DNA of 17,029 nt from Octopus sinensis (Eukaryota). The notes beneath the pieces were generated by a model, which worked only from the letters and a program-made list of their open reading frames with translations, did no database searches and was not told the origin of the DNA. Shown in pieces: positions 1-17,029 of the stretch. The position numbers and the translations under genes were made by a program. Numbering within the stretch: the stretch's first letter is position 1; each line of letters opens with the position of its first letter. Location: contig NW_021824993.1 in NCBI RefSeq assembly GCF_006345805.1, positions 1 through 17,029 on the forward strand. Reading direction: 5' to 3'.

Positions 1-1430
1 AGTCCATCATTATACTCTGTCATTTATAATTTGACAAATTCAACCTCTCTTCTCTGGGCAACATATTTTCATTTTGATGCTTTTAAAATATGAAAATTAC
101 TTTGACAGTCATTGACCAGAACAAGATGAAGATCTCAGTCAGTAAAGGAATTTGTCTGGGGTCATCAAAGTTTGAAGTTACTCTTTTTAGTTTTATAAAG
201 TCACTAAAAGTCTTACGTTTTCTCAATTTATAGAAAAGTAACACTTTTATAAATGAGTTTATTGTTACGCATTAAATGTTAAACTAAATTTGCTCCAGCT
301 GGTCTATATAAACAGTAACCTATAGCTTTGAACAGCCTTATTATTTTGTTGTGTATTTACATGGCATATAATGTGTGAATAGAATTTCTCCCCCAGTTAT
401 CCAAGCAAAAAATCAGAAACTTATGTTATCAATTTATTTAGAATAATTTTGTACAAAGTTTGATACAAAATAATTTTGTTGTGTCTGGGGAGAGTCATTC
501 TCTTTTAGTGCCTTATTATTTAACACACTCACCGGTAAAATTTCGTTTTGCTTTAATAGTAATTATCAATTTCTGAATAAAGTTTCTTTTTATCTAATTA
601 AAATATCTTGATTATTTAATTTGAAAACAATCAGGTTGTTCACTTCTATCACAAAAGAATCCAATAAAAAGTGGAAAATACTTATGAATCTTCCTTTCCA
701 ATTCCACAAAAGTCTGCTCGGTAGAGCTTCCTGTCACATCTTATAATGTACATAAAGGTCTCATGTGTGTTACTTATTTAATCTTGGTCTCTGCTGTAAG
801 AACTTGAAATCTAATTTCAAATTAAAATAACAGTGGAGTAATATGAAGGTAAATATTGTAAGGAAGAATTGTACTCTTCCTTTATCTGAAGTTATTCAAA
901 AAGAGGGCGACACTGTGGCTTTTCCACAATCACATGCAATTAAAACAACAAATGTTGTGTCAGGATTTTTCAGCACAGCTATTGTTTAATTATAATTTTT
1001 TTGATTTATTTTCATATGTATAATAGTGAAGTTTTATTTTTACTGACGAAAATTTCAGTAATTAGTAAATAACGAAGGTCATAAAGTAAGAATATAAAAT
1101 TAAAATATAGTATATTGCACTCAAAACCCCCTGAATTTTTATTCAACCACCACCACTTTGGAGAGGCCTGTCTTAAACCACAACAGGACAAAGTGAGATA
1201 TATCCTTAGATACATCATGTATTATATAGAAATACTATCTCTATAGGATATATAAAGGGAAAGGCATCAATATATATATACCAGGCATTCTACTCTCAGC
1301 TAAAAATGAAGGTAGATAACTATCAATATAGCAGAAGATATTAAAGCTGTCTATATAACAATGGGGTTGCTTAGGGGGGGGGTTAGATACAACAACAGCA
1401 ACAACGTAAATGAACATTTCAAAGTTTGTC

Positions 1431-1436
1431 TTTATT
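1431..1436 (-). promoter_or_regulatory. Candidate polyadenylation signal AATAAA
   Basis: tttatt on the plus strand about 245 nt past the death-domain stop codon. The hexamer is common in AT-rich DNA. Confidence 0.3.
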
Positions 1437-1579
1437 TTAAATGTGAATTTTTAACAAAGGAGCCAAACCAGTGAAGGGATCACTACGTGGTTGATATACC
1501 TGCTAGAATTAGCAGCTAAATTCACACGATACCACTGTACAGAAGAGCATATTGGACAATGTGGTTGTGGGTTCTCTTT

Positions 1580-1666
1580 GGAAATAGGCATGATGGTCCT
1601 GGCTGGAATGGGTTTGATCATAAGTCTCTGTTTGGTCAAGGTTAATCTGAGGCTAAACAACAACAG
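1580..1666 (+). repeat. Probable retroposon 3' end with (AAC)n tail inside the putative 3' UTR
   Basis: GC-richer segment ending ...ggtcaaggttaatctgaggctaaacaacaac. It resembles a cephalopod interspersed-repeat tail from memory; unverified. Confidence 0.35.
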
Positions 1667-1678
1667 TTACACAGAAAT

Positions 1679-1878
1679 TCACTTTGCGTCTAATGACAGA
1701 CATTCCATCGCAGCGAAACATTCAGCTTCTTCGAGAGCTGCACTTAATGTTGCGTGTGTCCGTGTTTCTGGGTCGCAATTTTTGAACCATTCCTTAAGCA
1801 TCAGGTAGCCTTGTTTTACAGTGTCAATAGACTCATCATCAATTTTCAGTTCAGTTGTATCAACTCCTAAAAATATCG
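1679..1878 (-). CDS. Terminal coding exon: death domain, second part
   Basis: Acceptor gttgtgtcttttgcAG (1879-1894), TGA at 1679-1681. Translation IFLGV...QGYLMLKEW...THATLSAALEEAEC...AMECL fits the death-fold pattern LG...Y.ML..W...T...L..AL. The 5' part of ORF 1679..1891 in the track (MSFA) is intronic. Confidence 0.9.
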
Positions 1879-4800
1879 CTGCAAAAGACACAACAATAAG
1901 AAATAAATAACATAAAACGCTGTGTACTGTAGGTTGTTATGAATATAACAAACAAACTTTATCAATAGAGAAATAAAAAAAGAAATAGCTAAGAAACATG
2001 AAAAATATAAGACATTGTTTTCTATAGACAAAAATAACAAAGAGTTTGAATTAAACGAGATTTTTAAAGAAAATTAATTGAAAATTATACTTGAGAAAAT
2101 ATATGGTAAACGAGGGCAGGAAAACTTTTGTGAAGGCAAAAGTATATCAGAACCTCAAGAATTAACATTGACCTCCAACAGTGAAAGCATATGATCCATC
2201 CATTTCCTCTGCTCAATATTCTTGAGGGCTGTGGGGAAAGAGTCCTCAGGCACCTCCTCCATAGGGTCCTGTCAGAAGCATCCATCATTAGACATTCTGC
2301 TTGTATTCTATGATGTGAAGAACTAAGACTATGGATATCATCCAACCATTTCTTTCTTGGCCTCCCCCTCGGTATCCTGTTCCATTGGTTTGACTTTGAG
2401 AACCTGTCCTGTAATTCATTCCTGCAACACCCTGATCACATGTCCGAGGTACCACAGATGTGGAGGAGATGTGGTTCAACCTGGAGAGACTCCCAGATCT
2501 CTGAACTGTAAATCCTATTGAGTAACATTACTCCAAAGACCCTTTAGAAGAATCCCATATACCTGTCTTATTCTGGTAGATTTCAGACCTGGTATTCAAA
2601 AGGGTCATAAAAGCACTGTCCCTCTGTGCCATCTACTACCTTACAAAGTTCCCAAGAGGACACTGGAAATCGAATGATCAGTGATTGTCCAACAGTCGAT
2701 AATTCTAAGTCAAATTCAATCCCATTTCAAACTTCTCCAATGAACTCCAGGTTCGATCAATTCTACAGAGCCTATTCAGTTATTATTATGTCAGTCTCAA
2801 TGAGAGATGCCACCTCCAGTTCGGCTTGACTTGTGAATGTTCATTTTCTGGTAAATTCCCTTAAAGGAATTCTCTGTTTTCGCCTGAGGAGAATGATAGG
2901 ATTTCGCTGTGTCACCTTTATTAAATCTCTTTTTATTGAAGCATTTACAGACATATGTCATGTGGTAAAGTCATTGCAAAATGGCAAAATAAATTGGAAT
3001 TATCAGCTTCCAACACAATAACCCAATAAATAATCTGTTTGAAGAAAGATGCTTTGTTTTAGATGTTAACTTTGGTACTTGTCCTTCATTACAATAACCT
3101 AACAGTGAACCTAAAGAAAATGTGAAACAAATTCACTCACCTGTTTACCCTTAAACAATATATTTTAGTTCCTTCTTCCAAAAGATAATATTAAACGCCA
3201 TTTGTGTTTTCTAGTTTATCCATTATTACCAACCATGCTAACCTCAGTGGATATTTATGAAATATCAGGAATATCGTAAATAAAATTGTCATACAGATAA
3301 CCTATCAATTGGAAATGAGGAATGTAACTTGTTCTCATTCATTCTGACAAATAAAATAGATCAGGTGAAAGTAAAATATATAGAAATCAAATATACTCAC
3401 CTATTTGCCACCAATCACGTCCTAACCTCTTAGCCACTCTCAGAAGATCTTTCTCCTTCAGAACTGGACTCTCTGAAATAAATATTTCCAGCTTTTATAA
3501 TTGATTGTAAAACTTATTTATCTCTATAAATATTCTGTAGTTTATTGTTGTGGGACATTGTTATCATCAGTTGGTTGGCTGGTAACCACTAGGGTTTTGC
3601 TCAGTATTTTTATACTTTCCATTGTGGGACCAGGTAATAGCTCAATATTTAGGCCCGCAACAAAATAGACTAACTTTCCGAAACCTTGTTTCTCTTTAAC
3701 AGAGACATCCTACATAATCTAACAATGTTGCAATTATTTCATTCAATTATCATTTCATAGTTCTCTCTCTCCTTTCATATATCTGTACCAAATCTATGAC
3801 ATGTGACTGTCCTCTGAACTCTACACTTCACTAACCACCATTCTCCTCATCTTCTGCTAAAGTCCAATATCATCCAATGTGGTCTCCAAAGATCTCGTCA
3901 GAATTGCATGACACACCACTTCAAGTAAAATAAACGTAATACCTGTTCTCTTTGCTGTTGGAAATCTTGAATTTTATCATCCCACATCCCAGTTCACCTG
4001 GTCATTATCTGGTGCAGGGAATATTTTAAGACTCCTTAATACAGGTGAGCAATGATCAGTTCTCCAAAGATGACACAAAAAGTGATATCAGGTGTCCTAA
4101 AACAATGTACACTTGCACAAAACCCCATTCACTACATACAACTGGACATCTACACATTATTGCAGTGAAGACATCTGAAATGGTACAAAAGGACTGATAC
4201 TCAAAATATAAGAAAGACGGGAATACAAAGTGCGAGCTCCAAATCTTTTATTTTCCAGAATGTTTGGCATATTGTTTCTTTTAACCATCTTCGTTCTGTG
4301 ACTTGATCTCAATGCCTTTACTCTTATTGCAAAATTAGGTAGTGTACCATCGTCGTAATAGTTTTTCAAGTTTCCCTTTAAACTTCATCAGGGTTTCTCC
4401 TGCTATTTTGACCTTCACTTGTTTCTGCTGACCTTTCAGAAATGACTGGCTTCATTACTCATTTGCATTGAACCACATTCTTCACCAAGTTCCTCAGTCT
4501 ACCCAGTTAATCCAGAACTATTTGCATATCCTTTTATTTGTTGTTACTATTGTTATGTAATCCATTAATGTCTTCTCCAGTGTTTTCCTTTGAGCCATTT
4601 CTTATCAATCTGCTGATTTAAGTAACATCTCCATAACAATCACAAACCAAATGACTGATTTTGTAGAAACTACAGCAATTCCCGCTTCAAAATGATACCA
4701 GTCTATCGAGAAAGTTTTCCTCAAGAACTGCATATTGAAATTGTTATAGCAGCTCCTCATCAGATCCTTAATCTTTTCTCATATATAAAACAGGTCCACT

Positions 4801-7800
4801 GCTTCCATCAACAATTTGTTTGCTAGAGAACCATAAACCAGATCAAATCTCACAACATTCAATCCCTTTTAATCTTCTTTCCGTCTTGTATCACATCCTA
4901 GATTTAAGACACATGTTCCACACAGCCAGGAATGCCAGAGGATTCCAGTCTTCGAGATACTTTTAGTCCCATATTCTTTATTCTGTAGATTTACAGTTGA
5001 TCTCTTTGTGAATACAACCTTATAAATCTTGCCATTTATATTCAAGGTTGAAATTAGTCTGAACTAATCAATCGGTATTTGATTGCTGGTTTCAATGGAC
5101 ATTTCAAACTGTCTATGAATGGGAATCATTGCTTTTGCTTTGGATCTCCTGCATATATCCATCCAGTTCATCTTTATTGTATTTTAGCTTTCTGTTCTCA
5201 GTATCTGCAAACAGAATTTCCTTGTAGAAGTTAAAGAGGAGCGTTTAATTTTGTTGACGACATGATCATTTTTCTAGGGCTTTTGGAGCAAAATGTGCCC
5301 AAGGCCCTTTTTAAAGTGGTTGATGTTAGGAAAGGCACATCACCATAGAAAAGCCGGAATGTGTTCCTCATCCAATCAAGGCGGACAGTATTTGTTAATA
5401 AGAACTGACATGGATAGGAATCATCCATCCAATCGATAGGAGCATAGACATCAGATGATAAATGATGAGGGTCATCAGTGTCTATCTTGGAGAGAGAGGG
5501 AGAGAGAGAACGGTTGTCTCAGCATCAAACCTAATGCTTTTACATGGATAAAGACAATGTTTAGGGGATGTAATGATAAATTTATTATCAGTGAGAACAA
5601 AAGGCAGGGTGTTCACATACGGAACACATTTCATTGTAAATCTGTCACATTATGAGAGATATTTGCCTAAATAGCAACAACAGCAATAACCTATCAGTAA
5701 ACTTTGTAACTACATATCTTAGTCCTCCGTTTCAAAATACAGTATTAATTCTATTGTCTTCTAAATTATCCATTTACCGAACCATGCCAACCCGTTGACT
5801 ATTTGTGAAATTCCATTGATATCAAAATGTCTAATAGAATTATTATACAGCTAATATTTCAGATGTAAATTAGGAATGGATCTTGTCCTCAGTCATTCTG
5901 ATAAACTACAAATGCTCAGGTGAAGGTTAAATTTATAGAAATCCATGAGGTACTGTTATTTGCTTCTCACCAACTGGCTGTGATGTTGTCAAGGCATCCT
6001 TCACAGAAGTTGGAGTCTTTGAAATGAATATTTTCAAGTTTTACGTTTTATAGTATAATTTCATTATAGTTATTGATAATCAACACTTTATATTGTGGGA
6101 AGGGCATACAGCTGTAAAAACTAGTTCGTAGGGATGTGGTTGTGTACCCATGTAAAAGTTATGTTAACTTTGAGGGTAACAAGGTGTAAAATATCAGATG
6201 AGGGTACAAGATAATGCTATGAAACTTCCAGACAGACAAGTTTAAGAGAGTTAATGAATGATAGCTGATTAATTATCATGTTAATGCGGCGTTTAAACAC
6301 TAACTATCAATATAGATTGTATAAAATCTGTGTGAAGAACATGTGACATTTGTTACAATTAATATGGTTGTGTCTCAGCACAGTTGATATTATGGTAGTT
6401 CCATGAGAAACCATAGAAAAATGTAACCATTTCCAGTACCGAATACTAATGATGAATTCTTTTCTTGGTCAAATAACAATGACCAGGTTCCATGATCTAA
6501 TTTCAACAGAACAATCAAGTCGGAAGTAAAACCAAAATGTGGAAGACTGAAAACAGTGACTCTCTTACAATTGAAACCATCTCAAAGCCAACAATTGTCA
6601 GTATAACGATGTCTATATATGGACAGTAAACGTTATTCAAACATCGTAACAAGCGATAATTATATATATATAGTTAGAAAAGAGTTGTGAGTTCAAGTCA
6701 CACTGGAATCTCATACGTTCATTCCTTTCCATGTATTGCATATGTTAGCATCAATGTTTTGTTCAAATGTGAACATATGTTCTCTGTTCAATATGAATGT
6801 TATCAAAATCACTGAATCGGTTCCACAATCGATATTATTATACTGAGCTAATATTTATACCAGACAGGAAACTACTGTAACAATCTAAGACAAAGAATTA
6901 TGATGAGTTACTGGAAGACAGCATCTCATCATCATCATCATCAACATTCCAAGTTTTGTTTCCATGCTGGAATGGGTTGGAAATCTTGACAGGATCTGAC
7001 AAGCCAGACAACTGCACCAGGCCCCAGATGGTTTCTTTGGCATGGTTTTCTACGGTAGGATGTTCTTATTGATGCCAACCACCCACAGAGTGTACGTGGC
7101 CCCTTTTGTAAAGCACAAGTACTGGCATATTTAGCCAAAAGACATGTAAGACAAAGACCCCACAGCCGGGAGAGGGGTATTGCAAATTTCTCTCCCCGCA
7201 TCCTGATTCTTTTGTCATCACATTCCCTTCTCACCTCCTGAAAATGTCATCAGCTTCAGTGAACCAAACATCATAGAGTAGTGAGGACCGTCTAATTATA
7301 TAGAATGTAGCACAACTTGATTACTACTTGTGCTATAATTAAATGCTCCCAGAACACACTAGGAAGTGGTTGTTGGAAACTAGGAAAGATGACACCACAA
7401 GTTTGAAAGGAACGTTTGATATTGTTGGGAAATTGATGATCATTTCTAATGCTTGTGCGACAATAAAATATACCCACGACCCTTTATAAAGTGGTTGGGG
7501 TTAGAAAGGGTCTACCACCTTAGAAAAGCTGCAATGTTTAAGTGAGATGTTTTCCTCAACAAATGACGGTTGGCAGTAATTTCAGATACAACTGACTTGG
7601 ACAGTGATGACCCACCTAGTGTATGGGAGCATGGAGAGCAGATGAGAAAAGATGAAGATGATATCATTTATTGTATTGAAACTTTTAACCCAGCATCTTT
7701 CTTGAAAAGACGGAGAGAAGAGCATGAATGAGAGAGAGAGAATCAATGAGTACAATGAGATGACAAACAGGGCGAATATTCTCCTTAACGGGAGAGAACC

Positions 7801-10800
7801 GTTTCAGGGTTTATATTTAATTTTTGAATCTTTCTTTCTGCGAGTGAATGAGTAACTGATGTTTGCATAAAGTACATTTATTGGATATTCGTGTTGTTGT
7901 AGAACAACAGAATTTCTTTATAGCTAAGCATTCAAATGAAATATAACATTGGAACCTGTTCTATTGACCAAAATGGCTCAGTAAAAGCTAAAATTTATAG
8001 AAATCAATTATGTAATGTCATTCTATACTCAGCACGTGGCTCTTCTACTGTCTGGACCTCTTTGTCTTCAAATATTGGCCTTGCTGAAATAAATACTTCC
8101 AAGATTATACTTTATAGTAAAATTTCTTTAATGATCATCGATATTTTATAATTGTGAAATATTCCTATAACCAATAGTCAAGATTAACCGTCCCAAATGC
8201 CCCCACTCTGTAGGTAACGAAGGGCTTCTCCCTAAGAGTAGAAAGCAGATTGTATGAGACTTGTGTACGGACAGATGTACAACACAATAATGAAAGATAG
8301 GCTGTGAAGATAGAAGACATGCAAAGGGTTGGAGACAAATGAAGCCAGCATGCTCCACTGGATGTACAACATCGGTGTTCAGGTAAGTCACAGTGGAAAT
8401 GTCTTAAGAGCAAATCTGGGTATAAGAGTCATCCGATGTAGAGTTCAAAAGAGAGATCTTTCATAGTATGGTTATGTGATGCATATGGATGAGGTGATCA
8501 GCATAAAGAGATGCGGATCTCTAAACGTGGAGAGAAGCTGAGGAAGAGGAAGACTGAGAAAGACATGGGACAAAGTGGTGAGAAATGATGTTCAGATGCT
8601 GGGCTTCACACGGGAAGATAACTAAAACAACTGAGACAATCAGCAATTTTCTGTGCTTGAAAAGACCCAACTGGCTAAGTAACATCGAGGCCATCAAGGC
8701 ATGTCCTTTATGTGCATACCTTCCACCCCGCACACAATCTGTCCCCTAGGAAACATCTCCACAAGCTAAATTCCATACACCCTTCCCCAACATGATCCCT
8801 AACAAGATATAAAATGTAAGGTGAGGGTACACGATGCTCCTATGACAAAATAAGTTTACATTTCAGACATACAAATGTAAGAGAGTTAATGAATTATAGC
8901 TTATTAATTATCATGATAATTGGGTATATATGTGATACAATGGCACTGTGCTTGACGGTGCAATACTAGATATCAATATAGATTGTATATAATCTGAGTA
9001 AAGAACATATAGCCTTCATTACAATGAATATGATTGTGTCTCAGCACAGCTAATATTATGGTAGTTCCATGAGCAAAGGAAGAAAGATATAACCAAGTCC
9101 ACTGCCAAATACTAATGATTAATTCATTTCCTGGTCAAATAACAATGACTATCTTTCATTAAATAATTTGAACGCAACGATGTCAGTGTGCACACAAGGC
9201 AGAGTGAAGAGGCCTGAGAGAAGTGGTTGACATAAGAAGCATCAGATGTGGTGTACAAGAGAGACAACTGCACTGTATGGTTTTGGGTATGGATGAGGAG
9301 AATTGTGGGAGAAGTGTTGCACCCTAACAGTGGAAGGAACGCGTGGAAAGAGTGACCCAGAAGACAGGGCATGACGTGGTGAAACGACCTTCGAACGTTG
9401 GGCCTCACAGAGGTAATGGCAAGAGACAGAGACCTCTGGAAATATGATGTGATTAAAGGACCCGGCAAGTGAAGTGAGATCACAGCTGTAGCCTTACCAG
9501 TGTTGCATAACCACCCCTTTTAAAAGTACCTTGAATCACAGAGTGATAAGTTGCGCTTGAGAAGAATTTCTGAGTCAAGTAAACCAAAAACCAGAAATCA
9601 CAAATCAAAATCAAATCAAGATCGAAATCAAAATGCAAATTGTAATTATGGCCAATGCCAGTGCCGCCTGGCTGGCACCCGTGCCGGTGGCACATAATAA
9701 GTACCATTCAAACATTGTTTGTTGCCAGTGCCGCCTGACTGGTTCCCTGTGCCGTTGGCACATAAAAAACACCATCCGAACGTGGTTAATGCCAGCCCCA
9801 AATTCAACTGGCTCCTGTGTCGGTGGCACGTAAAAAGCACCCACCACACTCTCGGAGTGGTTGGCGTTAGGAATGGCATACATATGTGGAAACCTTGCCA
9901 GATCACATTGCAGCCTGACGCAGCCTACTGCCTTGCCAGTGAAATCGTCCGACCCATGCCACCATAAGAAACGGATGTTAAATGATGATGATGATGATGA
10001 TGATGAGTTCTGTGACCAAATGACAAAATTAACTCTATTGTGTCTTCTAATTTGAACATTATTACCAACAGCATTAATCTCAATGGGTATTTCATAAACT
10101 CACAGTAAATCGATATCTTTAATTCAATTATTATACAGATAATCGTTCAATTGGAAAATAGGAATGGAAGCTGTTTTCAGTTATTCTTTCAAGCACAATA
10201 TACTCGGGGGAAGAAAACCTTACAGAAATCAATTGGGAACTATTATTTTATACTCACCAATTGCCTGAGATGCAGCCCCTAATTCCTGACATGTAGCCTC
10301 TTTTTTTACACACCTGTCTTCAGACTTTGGAGCCCCTGAAATAAATATTTCCAAGTTTTACATTTGATATTAAAATGTCTGTATCTTTATTTTTATTAAA
10401 CTCTATCTTGTTATAGTGAGTCATTCAATTGGTGACCTTACTGGTCAAATGTTGACCATTATGGTTTTGGTCAATATTTCTGTACTCTCTACAGTGGTCC
10501 CATGTAATAGCCCAATGTTTCCACAATAAAACAGACTAACATTCCTAAATCCACCCTCTCCCTCTCTCTCTCTCTCTCTAGAAACACATTAAATATTCTA
10601 ACAATGTTGCAATTATCTCATTTAATTAACACTTGATAAGAGTTTCCTCTTAGCTTTGTCTTTCTTTTCTTATAACTGTGCCAAATCTATGGCATGGCAC
10701 AGTCCTCTCATCTCTAGAATTCACTAATCAACATTCCTCTCTAATTAAGTAAAACTAAGCCCATAAAGACATGTTCTTTATGTGCATACCCTCCACCCCG

Positions 10801-13800
10801 CACACAATCTGTCCCCTAAAAAAACATCCCCAACAACCTTGAAACCATACACCTTTTCCCCACCATGATCCCTAACAAGATATAAAATGTTAGCTGAGGG
10901 TACACGATGTTCCTATGACAAAATATGTTAACATTTCAGACATACAAATGTAAGAGAGTTAATGAATTATAGCTTATTAATTATCATGATAATTGGGTAT
11001 ATATGTGATACAATGGCACTGTGCTTGACGGTGCAATACTAGATATCAATATAGATTGTATATAATCTGAGTAAAGGACATATAACCTTCATTACAATGA
11101 ATATGATTGTGTCTCAGCACAGCTAATATTATGGTAGTTCCACGAGCAAACGAAGAAAGATATAACCAAGTCCACTGCCAAATACTAATGATTAATTCTT
11201 TTCCTGGTCAAATAACAATGACTATCTTTCATTAAATAATTTGAACGCAACAATCAAGACCAAAGGGTGAAACACTCAGAAAACTGTGCCTCTTTTAGCA
11301 TTAATATCATTTAAAATCTAACAAGAGTGAGAAAAAGAATGACTATATGGATGGTAAATGTTGTTCAAACAATGTAATAAGTGTATATTATATATAGTTA
11401 CAAACAAGGATTTGTGAGATCAAGTCACACAGGGAACTCATATTTAATTCCTATCTTTGTATTTTATGTCAACACCAATATTTTTAAATGCAAACAGATG
11501 TTCACCGTTCAATACTAAATTTAATATTTAATCAACGTTAATGATCATTATACTTATAATCTTAGAGATTTGATTTTTAATGTCTTTAATTTATAACAAA
11601 GTTATTCTGACCTGAGACATTCAGGGTACGTACCTAAACAACATATCATGACAGACATCTGGATACATAACAATAACAACAACAATAACCTATGAGAAAA
11701 CTTAGGAAAGACCTTAGTAGCAAAAGAAACAAAAACTTTCTTTTTAACTCACCTGTTTACAAATAAACAACAAACTATTTTAGTTCTCTGTCCTAAAAGA
11801 CATCATTAACTCTATAATGTCTTCTTATTTATCCATTTTACCAACCACGTTAACCTTGATTTTATGAAATTTCAGTGGAATATCTAATAGAATCCTTTTT
11901 ACAGCTAATGCGGAAACTAGGGATTGACGAGCGATTATAAGAGTTGAAGAGGCCCTGTAGTAAGGTGAGGATCGGCAATGAGTATAGTGAAGAATTCCGG
12001 ATAGAAGTAGGAGTTCACTAGGGATCATTCCTAAACCCCTCGTTTTCATCATAGTCCACCAGGCAATAAGAGAAATGACAAATCAAAAGCAATTCAAGAT
12101 CGAAATCAAAATGCAAATTGTAGTTGTGACCGATGCCAGTGCCGCCTGACTGGCACCTGTTCCTGTGTCACGTTATAAGTACCATAGAAGCATAGGTCCT
12201 TGTCACTGCCGCCTGACTAGTTCCCTGTGCCGCTGGCACGTAAAAAGCACCATCCGAACGTGGTCGATGCCAGCCCCCACCCCGACTGGCTCCTGTGCCG
12301 GTGGCTCGTAAAAGGCACCCACCACACTCTTGGAGTGGTTGGCATTAGGAATGGGATACATATGTGGAAAACTTGCCAGATCACATTGCAGCCTGACGCA
12401 GCCTACTGCCTTGCCAGTGAAATCGTCCGACCCATGCTACTATAAAAACGGACGTTAAACGATGATGATGATGATGATGATGATGATGAGTTCTGTGACC
12501 AAATGACAAAATTAACTCCATTGTGTCTTCTAATTTGAACATTATTACCAACAGCATTAACCTCAATGGGTATTTCATAAACTCTCTGTAAATCGATATC
12601 TTTAATTCAATTTTTATACAGATAATTGTTCAATTGGAAAATAGGAAAGGAAGCTGTTTTCAGTTATTCTTTCGAGCACAATATACTCGGGGGAAGAAAA
12701 CCTTACAGAAATCAATTGGGAACTATTATTTTATACTCACCAATTGCCTGAGATGCAGCCCCTAATTCCTGACATGTAGCCTCTGTTTGTACACACCTGT
12801 CCTCACACTTTGGAGCCCCTGAAATAAATATTTCCAAGTTTTACATTTAAAAATAAACTTTCTTCATCTTTATTTTTATTAAACTCTATCTTGTTATTGT
12901 GAGACATTCAATTCCTGTCGTTAATGGTCAAATGTTGACCATTATGGTTTTGGTCAATATTTCTGTACTTTCTACAGTGGTCCCATGTAATAGCCCAATA
13001 TGTCCACAATAAAACAGACTAACATCTCTAAATCCCCCCCTCTCTCTCTCTAAAAACACATTAAATATTCTAACAATGTTGCAATTATCTCATTTAATTA
13101 ACACTTGATGACAGTTTTCTCTTAGCATTGTCTTTCTTTTCTTATAACTGCCAAATCTATGGCATGGCACAGTCCTCTCATCTCTAGAATTCACTAATCA
13201 ACATTCCTCTCTAATTAAGTAACACTGCGCCCATAAAGACATGTCCTTTATGTGCATACCCCCCACCCCGCACACAATCTGTCTCCTAAAAATCATCTCC
13301 ACAAGCCAAATTCCATACACCCTTCCTCAACATGATCCCTAAATCCCTAACAAGGTGTAAAATGTTAGGTGAGGGTACACAAGGTCCCTATGACAAAATA
13401 TGTTTACATTTCAGACATACAAATGTAAGAGAGTTAATGAATTATAGCTTATTAATTATCATGATAATTGGGTATATATGTGATACAATGGCACTGTGCT
13501 TGACGGTGCAATACTAGATATCAATATAGATTGTACATAATCTGAGTAAAGGACATATAACCTTCATTACTATGAATATGATTGTGTCTCAGCACAGCTA
13601 ATATTATGGTAGTTCCATGAGCAAACGAAGAAAGATATAACCAAGTCCACTGCCAAATACTAATGATTAATTCATTTCCTGGTCAAATAACAATGACTAT
13701 CTTTCATTAAATAATTTGAACGCAACGATGTCAGTGTGCACACAAGGCAGAGTGAAGAGGCCTGAGAGAAGTGTTAGACATAAGAAGCATCAGATGTGGT

Positions 13801-14842
13801 GTACAAGAGAGACAACTGCACTGGTATTGTCATGTGTATGGATGAGGAGAGCTGTGGGAAGAAGTGTTGCACCCTAACAGTGGAAGGAACGCGTGGAAAG
13901 GAGTGGCCCAGGAAGACAGGGCATGATGTGGTGAAACGACCTTCGAACGTTGGGCCTCACAGAGGTAATGGCAAGAGACAGAGACCTCTGGAAATATGAT
14001 GTGATTAAGAGGACCCGGCAAGTGAAGTGAGATCACAGCTGTAGCCTATACCAGTGTTGCATAACCAGCCCTTTTTAAAAGTACCCTTGAATCACAGAGT
14101 GATAAGTTGCGCTTGAGAAGAATTTCTGAGTCAAGTAAAACCAGAAATCAGAAATCACAAATCAAAATCAAATCAAGATCGAAATCAAAATGCAAATTGT
14201 AATTATGGCCGATGCCAGTGCCGCCTGACTGGTTCCCTGTGCCGGTGGCACGTAAAAAGCAACTTCCGAACGTGGTCAATGCCAGCCCCCACCCCGACTG
14301 GCTCCTGTGACAGTGGCACGTAAAAGGCACCCACCACACTCTCGGAGTGGTTGGCGTTAGGAATGGCATACATATGTGGAAACCTTGCCAGATCACATTG
14401 GAGCCTGGCGCAGCCTACTGCCTTGCCAGTGAAATCGTCCGACCCATGCTACTATAAAAACGGACGTTAAACGATGATGATGAGGAGGAGGATGATAATG
14501 ATGATGATGATGAGTTCCGTGACCAAATGACAAAATTAACTCTATTGTGTCTTCTAATTTGAACATTATTACCAACAGCATTAACCTCAATGGGTATTTC
14601 ATAAACTCTCAGTAAATCGATATCTTTAATTCAATTATTATACAGATAATTGTTCAATTGGAAAATAGGAAAGGAAGCTGTTTTCAGTTATTCTTTCAAG
14701 CACAATATACTCGGGGGAAGAAAACCTTACAGAAATCAATTGGGAACTATTATTTTATACTCACCAATTGCCTGAGATGTAGCCCCTAATTCCTGACATG
14801 TAGCCTCTGTTTGTACACACCTGTCCTCACACTTTGGAGCCC
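1679..14842 (-). CDS. Partial multi-exon gene: 26-aa repeat linker followed by a C-terminal death domain (5' end outside the window). Core join: 14765-14842, 12741-12818, 10258-10335, 3401-3472, 1679-1878
   Basis: All five exons have canonical AG/GT sites on the minus strand and all junctions are phase 1. The spliced frame is open: (G)APKCEDRCVQTEATCQELGATSQAI-GAPKCEDRCVQTEATCQELGAASQAI-GAPKSEDRCVKKEATCQELGAASQAI-ESPVLKEKDLLRVAKRLGRDWWQI-AIFLGVDTTELKIDDESIDTVKQGYLMLKEWFKNCDPETRTHATLSAALEEAECFAAMECLSLDAK*. No transcript evidence, so inclusion of the 78-nt exons is inferred. Confidence 0.75.
2215..2860 (-). mobile_element. Decayed, internally deleted RTE-clade (Rex3/Expander-like) LINE ORF2 fragment
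   Basis: Frameshifted minus-strand translation gives MGFF*RVFGVMLLNRIYSSEIWESLQVEPHLLHI, LWYLGHVIRV, RGRPRKKWLDDI and ASDRTLWRR, which match RTE C-terminal motifs. A weaker RT-like stretch (STVGQ...SWEL) lies at about 2620-2860. Confidence 0.75.
3401..3472 (-). CDS. 72-nt coding exon: death domain, first part (ESPVLKEKDLLRVAKRLGRDWWQI)
   Basis: Acceptor tggaaatatttatttcAG and donor G|GTGAGT. Phase 1-1. The final G plus CG of the next exon gives Ala and restores the typical death-domain motif L..VA..LG.DW..LA..LG. Confidence 0.9.
3945..5230 (-). mobile_element. Decayed non-LTR retrotransposon reverse transcriptase of the RLE-type group (HERO-like)
   Basis: With stops and frameshifts: FRLISTLNINGKIY..FTKR, GIPGCVEH, NVVRFDL-YGSLANKLLMEAVDLFYI*EKIKDLMRSCYNNFNMQF, FSIDWYHFEAGIA..STKSVIWFVIVMEMLLKSA, TLMDYITI, SGK*KIWS.HF.FP. 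These align in order with motifs I recall from this family (FRTISLLNVEGKIF, GCIEH, DLANAYGS.PH, TTDW..LE.GI..GCTIS.ILF...ME...SA, AFMDDLT, PGKYKVW). The RT call is firm; the clade is less certain. Confidence 0.75.
5262..5470 (+). repeat. Old SINE/RTE-tail-like repeat, followed by a (GA)n tract at about 5489-5510
   Basis: Core aaagtggttgatgttaggaaaggcacatcaccatagaaaag with a GAT-like tail. Aligns end to end with 7435-7672. Confidence 0.55.
5971..6018 (-). pseudogene. 48-nt paralogous cassette exon P1 with acceptor AG changed to AA ((E)TPTSVKDALTTSQPV)
   Basis: Upstream intron reads cttgaaaatattcatttcAA versus cttggaaatatttatttcAG in paralogs. Donor G|GTGAGAAGCAAATAACAGTACC aligns with G|GTGAGTATAAAATAATAGTTCC of E1-E3. 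Frame is open. Confidence 0.65.
6927..7127 (-). mobile_element. RTE-type 3' end / SINE tail, inverted relative to the other copies
   Basis: Reverse complement: tgccagtac...ctctgtgggtggttggcatcaataagaacatcctaccgtagaaaaccatgcc...ggcctggtgcag...aacccattccagcatggaaac...(gat)n. Colinear with the last ~170 nt of the plus-strand copies at 9840-10005 and elsewhere. Confidence 0.75.
7435..7672 (+). repeat. Old SINE/RTE-tail-like repeat paralogous to 5262-5470, followed by (GA)n at about 7730-7742
   Basis: Core aaagtggttggggttagaaagggtctaccaccttagaaaag. It occupies the same relative position in the adjacent ancient unit, so it was probably duplicated with the unit. Confidence 0.55.
8033..8083 (-). pseudogene. 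51-nt paralogous cassette exon P2 with donor GT changed to CT ((x)RPIFEDKEVQTVEEPR)
   Basis: Intact acceptor ggaagtatttatttcAG. The donor position reads G|CTGAGTATAG versus G|GTGAGTATAA in paralogs. Frame is open. A weak alternative GT lies 3 nt upstream (would give a 48-nt exon). Confidence 0.65.
8200..8682 (+). mobile_element. Decayed RTE-clade LINE ORF2 C-terminal fragment
   Basis: VTKGFSLRVESRLYETCVRT...EDMQR..NEASMLHWMYNI...LRANLGIRVIRCRVQKRDLS*YGYVMHMDE...GRGRLRKTWDKVVRND...VLEKTQLAK*. It ends at the stop codon and has no 3' UTR. Confidence 0.85.
9179..10005 (+). mobile_element. 5'-truncated RTE LINE (ORF2 C-terminus + 3' UTR + (GAT)n tail), X-type copy 1
   Basis: DVSVHTRQS...IRSIRCGVQERQLH...MDEE...TLTVEGTRG...VVK.DLRTLGLTEVMARDRDLWKY, followed by a UTR with three 67-nt repeats and a (GAT)n tail. 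Confidence 0.85.
10258..10335 (-). CDS. 78-nt cassette exon E1 ((G)APKSEDRCVKKEATCQELGAASQAI)
   Basis: Acceptor ttggaaatatttatttcAG, donor G|GTGAGTATA, length a multiple of 3, no stop in the phase-1 frame. Splice flanks are homologous to those of the death-domain exon. Confidence 0.7.
10556..10579. repeat. (CT)n microsatellite, with paralogous length variants at 13040-13051 and 15070-15089
   Basis: Read directly; repeat number differs among the three units. Confidence 0.9.
11907..12488 (+). mobile_element. Internally deleted RTE LINE (RT core piece fused to the 3' UTR), Y-type copy 1
   Basis: MRKLGIDE...SKVRIGNEYSEEFRIEVGVH*GSFLNP..FIIVHQAIRE (RT segment just before the YADD box) is joined at about 12075 to the aaatcaaaa...67-nt repeats...(GAT)n tail. 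Confidence 0.85.
12741..12818 (-). CDS. 78-nt cassette exon E2 ((G)APKCEDRCVQTEATCQELGAASQAI)
   Basis: Same intact splice sites and phase as E1; 4 nt differences from E1. Confidence 0.7.
13727..14512 (+). mobile_element. 5'-truncated RTE LINE, X-type copy 2
   Basis: Same 5' junction (gaacgcaac|gatgtcagt) and 3' junction (gat|gagttc) as 9179-10005, but only two 67-nt UTR repeats. Confidence 0.85.
14765..14842 (-). CDS. 78-nt cassette exon E3 ((G)APKCEDRCVQTEATCQELGATSQAI)
   Basis: Same intact splice sites and phase; 1 nt difference from E2. Confidence 0.7.
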
Positions 14843-16413
14843 CTGAAATAAATATTTCCAAGTTTTACTTTTAAAAATAAACTTTCTTCATCTTTATTTT
14901 TATTAAACTCTATCTTGTTATTGTGAGACATTCAATTCCTGTCGTTACTGGTCAACCTTTGACCATTATGGTTTTGGTCAATATTTCTGTACTTTCTACA
15001 GCGGTCCCATGTAATAGCCCAATATGTCCACAATAAAACAGACTAACATTTCTAAATCCACCCTCACTGCTCTCTCTCTCTCTCTCTCTAGAAACACATT
15101 AAATATTCTAACAATGTACCAATTATCTCATTTAATTAACACTTGATAACAGTTTTCTCTTAGCTTTGTCTTTCTTTTCTTATAACTGTGCCAAATCTAT
15201 GGCATGGCACTGTCCTCTCATCTCTAGAATTCACTAATCAAAATTCCTCTCTAATTAAGTAAAACTGAGGTCATAAAGACATGTCCTTTATGTACGTACC
15301 CTCCACCCCGCACACAATCTGTCCCCTAAAAATCATCTCCACAAGCCAAATTCCATACACCCTTCCCCAACATGATCCCTAACAAGATATAAAATGTAAT
15401 GTGAGGGTACACGATGTTCCTATGACAAAATATGTTTACATTTCAGACATACAAATGTAAGAGAGTTAATGAATTATAGCTAATTATTTATCATGATAAT
15501 TGGGTATATATGTGATACAATGGCACTGTGCTTGACGGTGCAATACTAGATATCAATATAGATTGTATATAATCTGAGTAAAGAACATATAACCTTCATT
15601 ACTATGAATATGATTGTGTCTCAGCACAGCTAATATTATGGTAGTTCCATGAGCAAACGAAGAAAGATATAACCAAGTCCACTGCCAAATACCAATGATT
15701 AATTCATTTCCTGGTCAAATAACAATGACTATCTTTCATTAAATAATTTGAACGCAACAATCAAGACCAAAGGGTGAAACACTCAGAAAACTGTGCCTCT
15801 TTTAGCATTAATATCATTTAAAATCTAACAAGAGTGAGAAAGAGAATGACTATATGGATGGTAAATGTTGTTCAAACAATGTAATAAGTGTATATTATAT
15901 ATAGTTACAAACAAGGATTTGTGAGATCAAGTCACACAGGGAACTCATATTTAATTCCTATCTTTGTATTTTATGTCAACACCAATATTTTTAAATGCAA
16001 ACAGATGTTCACCGTTCAATACTAAATTTAATATTTAATCAACGTTAATGATCATTATACTTATAATCTTAGAGATTTGATTTTTAATGTCTTTAATTTA
16101 TAACAAAGTTATTCTGACCTGAGACATTCAGGGTACGTACCTAAACAACATATCATGACAGACATCTGGATACATAACAACAACAACAACAATAAACTAT
16201 CAGAAAACTTAGGAAAGACCTTAGTAGCAAAAGAAACAAAAACTTTCTCGTTAACTCACCTGTTTACAAATAAACAACAAAATGTTTTAGTTCTCTGTCC
16301 TAAAAGGCATCATTAACTCTATAATGTCTTCTTATTTAACCATTTTACCAACCACGTTAACCTTGATTTTATGAAATTTCAGTGGAATATTTAATAGAAT
16401 CCTTTTTACAGCT

Positions 16414-16985
16414 AATGCGGAAACTAGGGATTGACGAGCGATTATAAGAGTTGAAGAGGCCCTGTAGTAAGGTGAGGATCGGCAATGAGTATAGTGAAGA
16501 ATTCCGGATAGAAGTAGGAGTTCACTAGGGATCATTCCTAAACCCCTCGTTTTCATCATAGTCCACCAGGCAATAAGAGAAATGACAAATCAAAAGCAAT
16601 TCAAGATCGAAATCAAAATGGAAATTGTAGTTGTGACCGATGCCAGTGCCACCTGACTGGCACCTGTTCCTGTGTCACGTTATAAGTACCATAGAAGCAT
16701 AGGTCCTTCTCACTGCCGCCTGACTAGCTCCCTGTGCCGGTGGCACGTAAAAAGCACCATCCGAACGTGGTCGATGCCAGCCCCCACCCCGACTGGCTCC
16801 TGTGTCGGTGGCACGTAAAAGGCACCCACCACACTCTCGGAGTGGTTGGCGTTAGGAATGGCAACATATGTGGAAACCTTGCCAGATCACATTGGAGCCT
16901 GGCGCAGCCTACTGCCTTGCCAGTGAAATCGTCCGACCCATGCTACTATAAAAACGGACGTTAAACGATGATGATGATGATGATG
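16414..16985 (+). mobile_element. Internally deleted RTE LINE, Y-type copy 2
   Basis: Near-identical to 11907-12488, at an offset of 4507 bp. Confidence 0.85.
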
Positions 16986-17029
16986 AGTTCTTGACCAAAT
17001 GACAAAATTAACTCTATTGTGTCTTCTAA

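What the first reader, a model, noticed from the sequence alone, without database searches (positions are those of the whole stretch)
8033..14842. One LC8 (dynein light chain)-binding-like motif per exon: D-[KR]-x-V-Q-T array next to a death domain
E2 and E3 encode EDRCVQTE, and the much more diverged P2 encodes EDKEVQTV (seen). This matches the LC8/DYNLL recognition consensus: Q at 0, T at +1, T/V/I at -1, K/R at -3, often D/S at -4, as in Bim DKSTQT, with VQT variants in Nup159 (established). The motif is shared between P2 and E2/E3 although the rest of the exon is barely alignable, which suggests selection. LC8 is a dimerisation hub for disordered multivalent clients such as ASCIZ, Chica and Nup159. 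Inference: each exon adds one LC8 rung to a ladder that dimerises the chain and positions two death domains, so exon number would set the signalling threshold.
Basis: partly seen in the sequence, partly recalled or inferred. Interest (0 to 1): 0.8.

Follow-up and report, generated by a model that had tools for sequence, protein, structure and literature searches.

The report
Octopus linker exons with LC8-like motif
The motif is real: it lies in small, recently duplicated exons that form the spacer before a death domain in an Octopus-only family of ubiquitin-ligase-like proteins, it fits the docking site for the dimerising hub protein LC8 and is the best-conserved part of these exons, but binding is untested and only two copies in this window are usable.

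Summary
On the minus strand, exons E3 (14765-14842) and E2 (12741-12818) encode EDRCVQTE. P2 (8033-8083) encodes EDKEVQTV. A death domain follows (3401-3472 and 1679-1878).

The gene belongs to an Octopus-only family with the layout ANK, MIB-type RING, 0-7 linker exons, death domain. All linker exons are phase 1-1 cassettes. They descend from the first death-domain exon, and their splice flanks are still homologous to it.

EDRCVQTE scores like a mid-range validated LC8 binder. Across 44 distinct linker units from three Octopus species, K(-3), V(-1), Q(0) and T(+1) are far better conserved than the other columns (0.63 against 0.21), and position -2 is free. This is the LC8 recognition pattern.

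Several points count against the ladder model:
- E2 and E3 are near-identical young duplicates.
- E1 reads VKK, which destroys the anchor.
- P2 has a broken donor (CT), and P1 a dead acceptor.
- About half of the family's units lack a usable anchor.
- The AlphaFold2 model is too poor to show disorder.
- Binding was not tested.

Verdict: a plausible, partly supported candidate LC8 client. The idea that exon number sets a signalling threshold remains speculation.

The parts
14765..14842 (-). E3: 78-nt phase 1-1 class-A linker exon encoding (G)APKCEDRCVQTEATCQELGATSQAI. The motif DRCVQT is at 14808-14825.
   Evidence: It has a canonical TTTCAG acceptor and GTGAGT donor. The same exon appears in annotated O. 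vulgaris and O. sinensis proteins.
12741..12818 (-). E2: 78-nt class-A linker exon encoding (G)APKCEDRCVQTEATCQELGAASQAI. The motif DRCVQT is at 12784-12801.
   Evidence: It differs from E3 at 1 of 78 nt.
10258..10335 (-). E1: 78-nt class-A linker exon whose anchor is destroyed. It reads DRCVKK (10301-10318), because CAA ACA has become AAA AAA.
   Evidence: The same VKK exon is present in O. vulgaris locus L001 and in proteins P0001, P0005, P0006 and P0028.
8033..8083 (-). P2: 51-nt short-class linker exon encoding (A)RPIFEDKEVQTVEEPR. The motif DKEVQT is at 8049-8066. The acceptor is intact.
   Evidence: The intact paralogue in L003 is used in O. sinensis isoforms P0009 and P0015.
8031..8032 (-). 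Defective splice donor of P2: CT instead of GT (CTGAGTAT, where all but one of the other 34 units in that alignment read GTGAGT).
   Evidence: The same change is present in O. sinensis contig L010, where P2 is modelled as the last coding exon, reading through to a stop.
5971..6018 (-). P1: decayed 48-nt linker exon with acceptor CAA instead of CAG and no motif (KDALTT).
   Evidence: The same defect occurs in L001 and L003, and P1 is in no annotated protein.
3401..3472 (-). Death-domain exon 1 (72 nt, phase 1-1) encoding (E)SPVLKEKDLLRVAKRLGRDWWQI. It is the ancestor unit of the linker exons.
   Evidence: A profile built from linker units alone hits this unit at E=2.6e-35, and the death-domain exon-1 units of six other loci at E=1e-19 to 1e-43.
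1679..1878 (-). Death-domain exon 2 with the stop codon (AIFLGVDTTELK...ECLSLDAK*).
   Evidence: Pfam Death scores 23.0 bits against a cut-off of 22.6. PDB profile matches are RIPK1 DD 3.6e-6 and PIDD DD 1e-4.
8676..17029 (.). Tandem array of 2.0-2.5 kb exon-plus-intron units with a 4.5-kb higher-order repeat. The array runs off the window, and the RING exon lies beyond 17029.
   Evidence: Searches show 91.7-95.6% identity between units. No RING exon is present in the window.

Best explanation
Shown:
- The region is the 3' part of a minus-strand Octopus gene of the family ANK repeats, MIB-type RING, linker exons, C-terminal death domain.
- E3, E2 and E1 are 78-nt symmetric (phase 1-1) cassette exons in young tandem 2.0-2.5 kb units.
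- These exons, and the short 51-nt class that includes P2, are diverged duplicates of the first death-domain exon. The splice flanks were kept while the coding body was remodelled.
- Each unit carries a core [ED]-[KR]-x-V-Q-T that is the best-conserved part of the exon family in three Octopus species.

Inferred:
- This core is a short linear motif that docks, as an added beta-strand, into the groove of the LC8/DYNLL dimer.
- Two chains would then be zipped in register between RING and death domain, with two competent sites in this gene (E3 and E2, 26 residues apart).
- E1 (VKK) is an anchor-dead spacer.
- P2 cannot be spliced onward in this locus because its donor is CT. It is therefore either skipped or ends a product without a death domain.
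- P1 is a dead exon.
- Site number changes by unequal crossing-over and by exon skipping, because any combination of these exons stays in frame.
For: Anatomy and splice sites.

Family and architecture. Only O. vulgaris, O. sinensis and O. bimaculoides carry it.

Origin from death-domain exon 1. Flanks are 70-84% identical and exon bodies 43-61%. VQT is three single-base changes from LLR.

Fit to the LC8 motif: rules and training sets come from PMC6607443. My matrix built from them gives EDRCVQTE 13.1 bits, EDKCVQTE 14.6 and EDKEVQTV 12.2, against a binder median of 14.6 and a non-binder median of 8.8. The flank-only score is 5.0, against a binder median of 3.5.

Conservation: among 44 distinct units the top columns are -3, -1, -8, 0 and +1, and -2 is among the least conserved. 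After clustering on non-motif columns, identity is 0.63 at -3, -1, 0 and +1 against 0.21 elsewhere. All four columns were in the top 6 of 17 in 500 of 500 resamples.

Codons: V(-1) and Q(0) show the highest share of synonymous differences, 0.52 and 0.35.

Specificity: 38 of 41 high-scoring 8-mers in 30,543 scanned lie in linker exons.

Multivalent LC8 duplexes are an established mode (PMC10046861).
Against: - No binding data exist.
- Validated non-binders include the close look-alikes VDRSIQTV (DAZL) and LDTSIQTE. Only 7 of 19 matrix-predicted peptides bound in that study.
- VQT anchors are rare among binders (3 of 79).
- 23 of 44 family units score below 5 bits (VKT, VKM, VKK, VQR, SQR, VQA, VQM). 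P0054 keeps seven linker exons with no predicted binder-range unit.
- Within class A, two of the three anchor codons are polymorphic.
- The family favours V/L/M at +2, which is disfavoured for LC8.
- A first nucleotide comparison of seven exon classes put the VQT codons at the exon average of 0.59.
- AlphaFold2 drew the repeats as low-confidence helices (pLDDT 31-58, whole model 48), so disorder is not shown.
- K(-3) is inherited from death-domain exon 1.
- The units are not independent samples.
Confidence: 0.4

Rival explanations
1. The conserved K-x-V-Q-T core is a functional short motif or beta-strand, but for a partner other than LC8. Candidates are another beta-sheet-augmenting domain or a modification site such as T-x-x-E. 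The resemblance to the LC8 motif would then be coincidental.
For: Conservation is concentrated at alternating positions -3, -1, +1 and +3, plus Q. This fits any strand-addition interface. T(+1) followed by E(+4) is common. V at +2 is conserved in much of the family although LC8 disfavours it. Whole subfamilies keep K-x-V-K-T with Q replaced.
Against: No other catalogued motif that I tried fits across the exon classes. The TRAF2-type [PSAT]x[QE]E occurs only in classes A, A' and B. The acidic -4, basic -3, free -2 and V/T-Q-T pattern is specifically the LC8 logic, and scores reach the validated-binder range.
Confidence: 0.25
2. The exons are only a variable-length flexible spacer between RING and death domain. 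The shared core would be left over from common descent of young duplicates and from death-domain exon 1, with no motif function.
For: - The family is confined to one genus.
- Units in the window are 92-95% identical.
- Exon bodies diverge faster than their intron flanks, 0.59 against 0.76-0.81.
- Anchor-dead exons (VKK, VKT, VQR) are kept and annotated as expressed.
- Anchor codons vary within class A.
- K(-3), V(+2) and A(+3) are inherited from death-domain exon 1.
Against: Units that have diverged to under 50% identity elsewhere still keep K, V, Q and T: 0.63 against 0.21, in 500 of 500 resamples. Synonymous differences accumulate at V and Q. V, Q and T are not inherited from death-domain exon 1, which reads LLR.
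Confidence: 0.2
3. The linker exons keep a helical, structured character from death-domain helix 1. They would act as a structural element, for example a helical spacer or, in some paralogues, a CxxC metal knuckle, rather than a disordered motif carrier.
For: AlphaFold2 draws each class-A repeat as a helix. The exons derive from the exon that encodes death-domain helix 1. One subfamily has a CxxC in every exon.
Against: Model confidence is very low (pLDDT 31-58). The cysteines in class A are not conserved, with C, F or S at the same site. The hydrophobic helix-1 residues LL and WW are replaced by polar ones.
Confidence: 0.1

Closest known systems
Multivalent LC8/DYNLL clients (ASCIZ/ATMIN, Nup159, Chica)
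   Same: Several copies of an 8-residue [DS]-[KR]-x-[TVI]-Q-[TV]-[DEP] motif sit in a linker at short regular spacing. In the known clients these assemble two chains into a duplex on LC8 dimers (PMC6607443, PMC10046861). Here two to four predicted sites per protein lie 17-26 residues apart.
   Different: Binding is unproven here. The anchor is VQT, which occurs in only 3 of 79 validated binders, rather than TQT. Each site is a separate cassette exon made by recent tandem duplication. Many copies in the family have lost the anchor. The host protein is a RING-death-domain protein found only in Octopus.
Bim and Bmf LC8 sites (CDKSTQTP, EDKATQTL); gephyrin EDKGVQCE; ZFPM1 SDKGVQTP; MAST1 RHQSVQTE
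   Same: They share near-identical flanks, E/S-D-K/R-x-[TV]-Q-T, and these peptides are validated binders. Bim and Bmf also link LC8 to cell-death signalling.
   Different: These are single sites in unrelated proteins. The look-alikes DAZL VDRSIQTV and TMV LDTSIQTE do not bind, so similarity alone is not proof.
Mind bomb 2 (MIB2) type ANK-RING E3 ligases
   Same: Family members carry ankyrin repeats and a PF13920 RING, and sources name them MIB2-like. Mammalian MIB2 acts on the death-domain kinase RIPK1 (PMC5912950 abstract). The death domain here is closest by profile to the RIPK1 death domain.
   Different: True MIB proteins have no death domain and no such linker exons. Here the RING is followed by the linker and a C-terminal death domain. 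The RING exon itself lies outside the window.

Membership tests
LC8/DYNLL-binding short linear motif | Anchor triplet at -1..+1 of type [TVIS]-Q-[TVC], with no charged residue at -1 or +1 | tested here: met
   E3, E2 and P2 have VQT. VQT is a validated anchor in SON, MAST1 and ZFPM1. The feature is not met by E1 (VKK) or P1 (LTT).
LC8/DYNLL-binding short linear motif | Favourable flanks: a polar H-bonding residue (D) at -4, a large or basic residue at -3, no bulky aromatic at -2, no internal proline, and D/E/P at +2 | tested here: met
   EDRCVQTE has D, R, C and E at these positions. Its flank-only score is 5.0 against a binder median of 3.5 and a non-binder median of -0.4; the rules are. P2 (EDKEVQTV) has the disfavoured V at +2 and a flank score of 1.0.
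LC8/DYNLL-binding short linear motif | Motif lies in an intrinsically disordered, accessible segment | tested here: inconclusive
   In the AlphaFold2 model of orthologue P0001, the linker repeats have pLDDT 31-58 but are drawn as helices. The whole model is poor, with mean pLDDT 48 and an alignment of 24 sequences.
LC8/DYNLL-binding short linear motif | Motif positions conserved in relatives above their neighbours | tested here: met
   Across 44 units from three Octopus species, identity is 0.63 at -3, -1, 0 and +1 against 0.21 elsewhere, and -2 is variable. Caveats: 23 of 44 units have lost a usable motif, and an early seven-class nucleotide comparison showed no excess conservation.
LC8/DYNLL-binding short linear motif | Direct, QT-dependent binding to the LC8 dimer (Kd in the micromolar range) | not testable with these tools
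   This needs ITC, pull-down or a complex prediction.
LC8/DYNLL-binding short linear motif | Client and LC8 share a compartment, and LC8 is present in the organism | not tested
   The ANK, RING and death-domain types imply an intracellular protein. I did not search for Octopus DYNLL. LC8 is near-universal in eukaryotes (established knowledge).
Multivalent LC8 client (duplex scaffold) | Two or more competent motifs in one chain, separated by short linkers | tested here: met
   E3 and E2 give two predicted sites 26 residues apart. Paralogues have up to four, for example P0002 and P0082. Their competence is only predicted.
Death domain (Pfam PF00531) | Sequence match above the curated threshold and similarity to solved death domains | tested here: met
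   The window's 90-aa C-terminus scores 23.0 bits against a cut-off of 22.6. Six of 8 family members match, the best at 5.5e-9. The family profile hits the RIPK1 DD at 3.6e-6 and the PIDD DD at 1e-4.
MIB-type ANK-RING E3 ligase | Ankyrin repeats plus a C3HC4 RING (PF13920) in the same polypeptide | tested here: inconclusive
   These are present in the O. vulgaris orthologue and in paralogues. No RING or ANK exon lies inside the window, so for this gene the architecture is inferred from 96.8% identity to locus L001.

The most novel reading that the evidence does not exclude
An Octopus-specific family of RING-death-domain E3 adaptors may have built a copy-number-tunable LC8 ladder from scratch. 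The first death-domain exon was duplicated. Three point changes turned helix-1 'KDLLR' into the docking motif 'KxVQT'. Tandem exon duplication, in units of 166 bp to 2.5 kb, together with exon skipping, would then set how many LC8 dimers zip two chains together, and so how readily the two death domains and RINGs are brought together.
Probability: 0.2. Interest if true: 0.75.

Novelty: new member of a known kind. Interest (0 to 1): 0.55.

Why it matters
If the peptides bind LC8, this would be a natural case in which a docking motif was born from a duplicated domain exon and then multiplied exon by exon. That would give a heritable and splice-adjustable valency in a lineage-specific family that is probably involved in immune or cell-death signalling. 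It would add a RING-death-domain ligase to the LC8 client list. It would also give a tractable system, with natural VKK, VKT and VQR variants as built-in controls, for asking how motif number affects assembly. If they do not bind, the finding is still a clear example of very fast exon turnover in cephalopod genomes, but an ordinary one.

Tried and rejected
- TRAF-binding motifs: [PSAT]x[QE]E fits TCQE (class A), ASEE (A') and TVEE (P2) but not the other exon classes. The TRAF6 pattern PxExx does not fit at all. Rejected as the conserved feature.
- Cysteine pattern in class A (C-x3-C-x6-C) as a disulfide or metal site: the first Cys varies between C, F and S among copies. Rejected for this gene.
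- Seven-class nucleotide comparison: VQT codons came out no better than the exon mean. I first took this as refuting conservation. Wider sampling of 44 units and 11 clusters reversed that reading, and both results are reported.
- AlphaFold2 of P0001: too low in confidence to decide between disorder and helix, so no fold search was run on it.
- Search for a RING or ANK exon in the window: none found.
- Looking for the window's exact source: the best matches are 96.8% (O. vulgaris L001), 97.0% (O. sinensis L010) and 95.7% (L003). None is identical, so the species or haplotype is unresolved.
- Linker-exon homologues outside Octopus: none in 5.8 billion proteins. The full HMMER scan outside Octopus found only distant death-domain proteins.
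- Locus look-up for P0030: not on record.
- Rfam and tRNA scans of the window: nothing.
- The bacterial-style ORF list is not meaningful for this intron-rich gene.
Full report
**What is in the window.** The motifs lie on the minus strand. A six-frame search finds D[KR]xVQT three times: DRCVQT at 14808-14825 and 12784-12801, and DKEVQT at 8049-8066. They sit in small exons with canonical splice signals:
- E3, 14765-14842
- E2, 12741-12818
- E1, 10258-10335
- P2, 8033-8083
- P1, 5971-6018
- Death-domain exon 1, 3401-3472
- Death-domain exon 2, 1679-1878, which ends in a stop codon

All the internal exons are phase 1-1 and have lengths divisible by three (78, 78, 78, 51, 48 and 72 nt). Any combination therefore stays in frame. 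Splicing E3-E2-E1-DD1-DD2 gives an open 168-residue C-terminus.

The death domain is real. Pfam Death scores 23.0 bits against a cut-off of 22.6. Six of 8 family members match. A family profile hits the RIPK1 death domain (3.6e-6) and the PIDD death domain (1e-4) among solved structures.

**What gene this is.** The translated C-terminus hits only Octopus proteins that sources name 'MIB2-like'. Their layout is ankyrin repeats, a PF13920 RING, 0 to 7 short linker exons, then the death domain.
- Window 1-7962 is 96.8% identical to the O. vulgaris locus of P0001 (L001).
- Window 3903-9177 is 97.0% identical to an O. sinensis contig (L010).
- No fetched locus is identical to the window.
- No RING exon is in the window, so the gene continues beyond 17029.
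- A full HMMER scan of 1.84 billion representatives, and a search with the concatenated linker exons, found the family only in O. vulgaris, O. sinensis and O. bimaculoides.
- I found no paper describing this family.

**The array is young and dynamic.** The exon-plus-intron units of 2.0-2.5 kb are 92-95% identical, with a 4.5-kb higher-order repeat. E2 and E3 differ at 1 of 78 nt. Their shared motif therefore says nothing about selection. The order and number of class-A exons differ between the window and L001, and the P2 unit is absent from L001. In other paralogues the same exons form arrays of only about 166 bp per unit.

**Status of each unit in the window.**
- E3 and E2 are intact and read EDRCVQTE.
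- E1 reads EDRCVKK-E, because CAA ACA has become AAA AAA. The same anchor-dead exon is present in O. vulgaris and in several annotated proteins.
- P2 has an intact acceptor, but its donor is CTGAGT, where all but one of the other 34 units in that alignment have GTGAGT. The same change is in O. sinensis L010, where the annotation lets P2 read through to a stop (P0029). An intact P2-type exon in paralogue L003 is used in two of three isoforms.
- P1 has CAA in place of the CAG acceptor in three loci and appears in no model.

So this gene offers two usable motif copies, not one per exon.

**Origin of the linker exons.** All linker exons, long and short, share about 75 nt of upstream and about 100 nt of downstream intron with death-domain exon 1. 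A profile built only from linker units hits the death-domain exon-1 units of seven loci at E=1e-19 to 1e-43. Flanks are 70-84% identical, while exon bodies are 43-61% identical. The linker exons are therefore duplicates of the exon that encodes death-domain helix 1, with the coding part remodelled. K(-3), V(+2) and A(+3) are inherited from '...EKDLLRVAK...'. V-Q-T replaces L-L-R by one base change per codon. A 72-nt copy that is still decaying serves as a linker in L008.

**Fit to the LC8 motif.** The rules and data come from Jespersen et al. 2019 (PMC6607443):
- Q at position 0.
- Mid-sized T, V or I at -1 and +1, with charged residues not tolerated.
- D at -4.
- A large or basic residue at -3.
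- Position -2 free, apart from bulky aromatics.
- D, E or P at +2, with hydrophobic residues disfavoured.

Many peptides that contain the anchor do not bind. I built a log-odds matrix from their 79 binders and 32 non-binders. This is not LC8Pred itself.

| Peptide | Score (bits) | Note |
|---|---|---|
| EDRCVQTE (E2/E3) | 13.1 | 35th percentile of binders in leave-one-out; above 81% of non-binders |
| EDKCVQTE | 14.6 | |
| EDKEVQTV (P2) | 12.2 | weak flank score, because V is at +2 |
| EDRCVKKE (E1) | -3.5 | |

About 1e-5 of random 8-mers reach the E2/E3 score. Validated neighbours include EDKGVQCE, EDKSTQTT, EDKATQTL, SDKGVQTP and RHQSVQTE. Validated non-binders include VDRSIQTV and LDTSIQTE.

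My first comparison covered seven exon classes at the nucleotide level. It gave the VQT codons the exon average of 0.59, and showed the exons diverging faster than their flanks, which were 0.76-0.81 identical.

Wider sampling changed this. From all family proteins I compiled 44 distinct units from three species. With sequence weighting, the best-conserved columns are -3 (K/R 0.90), -1 (V 0.74), -8 (P 0.73), 0 (Q 0.68) and +1 (T 0.70). Position -2 is among the least conserved.

I then clustered the units on the non-motif columns, which gave 11 clusters, and resampled one unit per cluster.
- Identity was 0.63 at -3, -1, 0 and +1, against 0.21 at the other 13 columns.
- All four columns were in the top six in 500 of 500 resamples. 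The prior chance for four named columns is 0.006.

At codon level, V(-1) and Q(0) have the largest share of synonymous differences, 0.52 and 0.35. These reflect few independent events. Of the 41 high-scoring 8-mers in 30,543 scanned, 38 lie in linker exons. The refutation criterion is therefore not met. A K-x-V-Q-T core with a free -2 is under constraint, and this mirrors the LC8 recognition logic.

**Evidence against a general LC8 role.**
- Only 15 of 44 units score in the binder range, and 23 score below 5 bits.
- Whole subfamilies read VKT, VQA, VQM or SQR. P0054 keeps seven linker exons with no predicted binder-range unit.
- Within class A, the Q and T codons are among the few polymorphic sites.
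- The family prefers V, L or M at +2.
- The AlphaFold2 model of P0001 is poor (mean pLDDT 48). The repeats appear as low-confidence helices, so a disordered context is not shown.

**Verdict.** The anatomy, the origin and the conserved core are well supported; I put that part at about 0.9. LC8 docking is the best available explanation of the core, at about 0.4. The rivals are a different partner for the same strand-like motif (0.25), a neutral spacer whose similarity comes from descent (0.2), and a structural remnant of helix 1 (0.1). The ideas that the ladder positions two death domains and that exon number sets a threshold remain inference. Multivalent LC8 duplexes are a known mode (PMC10046861), so if this is confirmed it would be a new client with an unusual exon-modular origin.

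Noticed in passing
L008 8408-9284; L009 16950-17830: In two paralogues the linker exons form compact tandem arrays of about 166 bp per unit (a 51-nt exon plus an intron of about 115 nt). In the window the units are 2.0-2.5 kb.
   Followed up: partly
L009 16950-17830 (proteins P0053, P0054): In one subfamily every 17-residue exon reads ECP[KR]C[KR]EKxVKTVxESF. That is one CxxC per exon, with Q replaced by K at motif position 0. These could be paired metal knuckles.
   Followed up: no
L008 9665-9736: A 72-nt exon, the same length as death-domain exon 1, encodes SLNLEENRAHSTSKKVAVKQQQV and is used as a linker in P0041. It looks like a recent copy of death-domain exon 1 that is still decaying.
   Followed up: partly
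Proteins P0015, P0019, P0020, P0021: Some annotated isoforms skip death-domain exon 1 and join the RING or a linker exon directly to death-domain exon 2. The resulting death domain would lack helix 1.
   Followed up: no
window 8031-8032; L010 about 7680: The P2 donor change from G to C is shared with an O. sinensis contig, where P2 is annotated as the last coding exon (…VEEPRAEYRMTLHN*). The O. vulgaris locus L001 lacks the P2 unit entirely.
   Followed up: yes
window 9982-10006, 12461-12489, 14473-14513; 9654-9795: The introns of the repeat units contain (ATG)n and (GAT)n microsatellites, and a 67-nt tandem repeat of 2.1 copies.
   Followed up: no
window 3401-3472 with 1679-1878: By profile, the family's death domain is closest to the RIPK1 death domain. 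Mammalian MIB2 ubiquitylates RIPK1. An ANK-RING fused to a RIPK1-like death domain may therefore target death-domain signalling complexes.
   Followed up: no
window-wide, against L001, L003 and L010: The window is a mosaic. It is 95-97% identical to loci from both O. vulgaris and O. sinensis but identical to none, and the order of VKK and VQT exons differs from L001. This indicates unequal crossing-over or gene conversion, or a third genome.
   Followed up: partly
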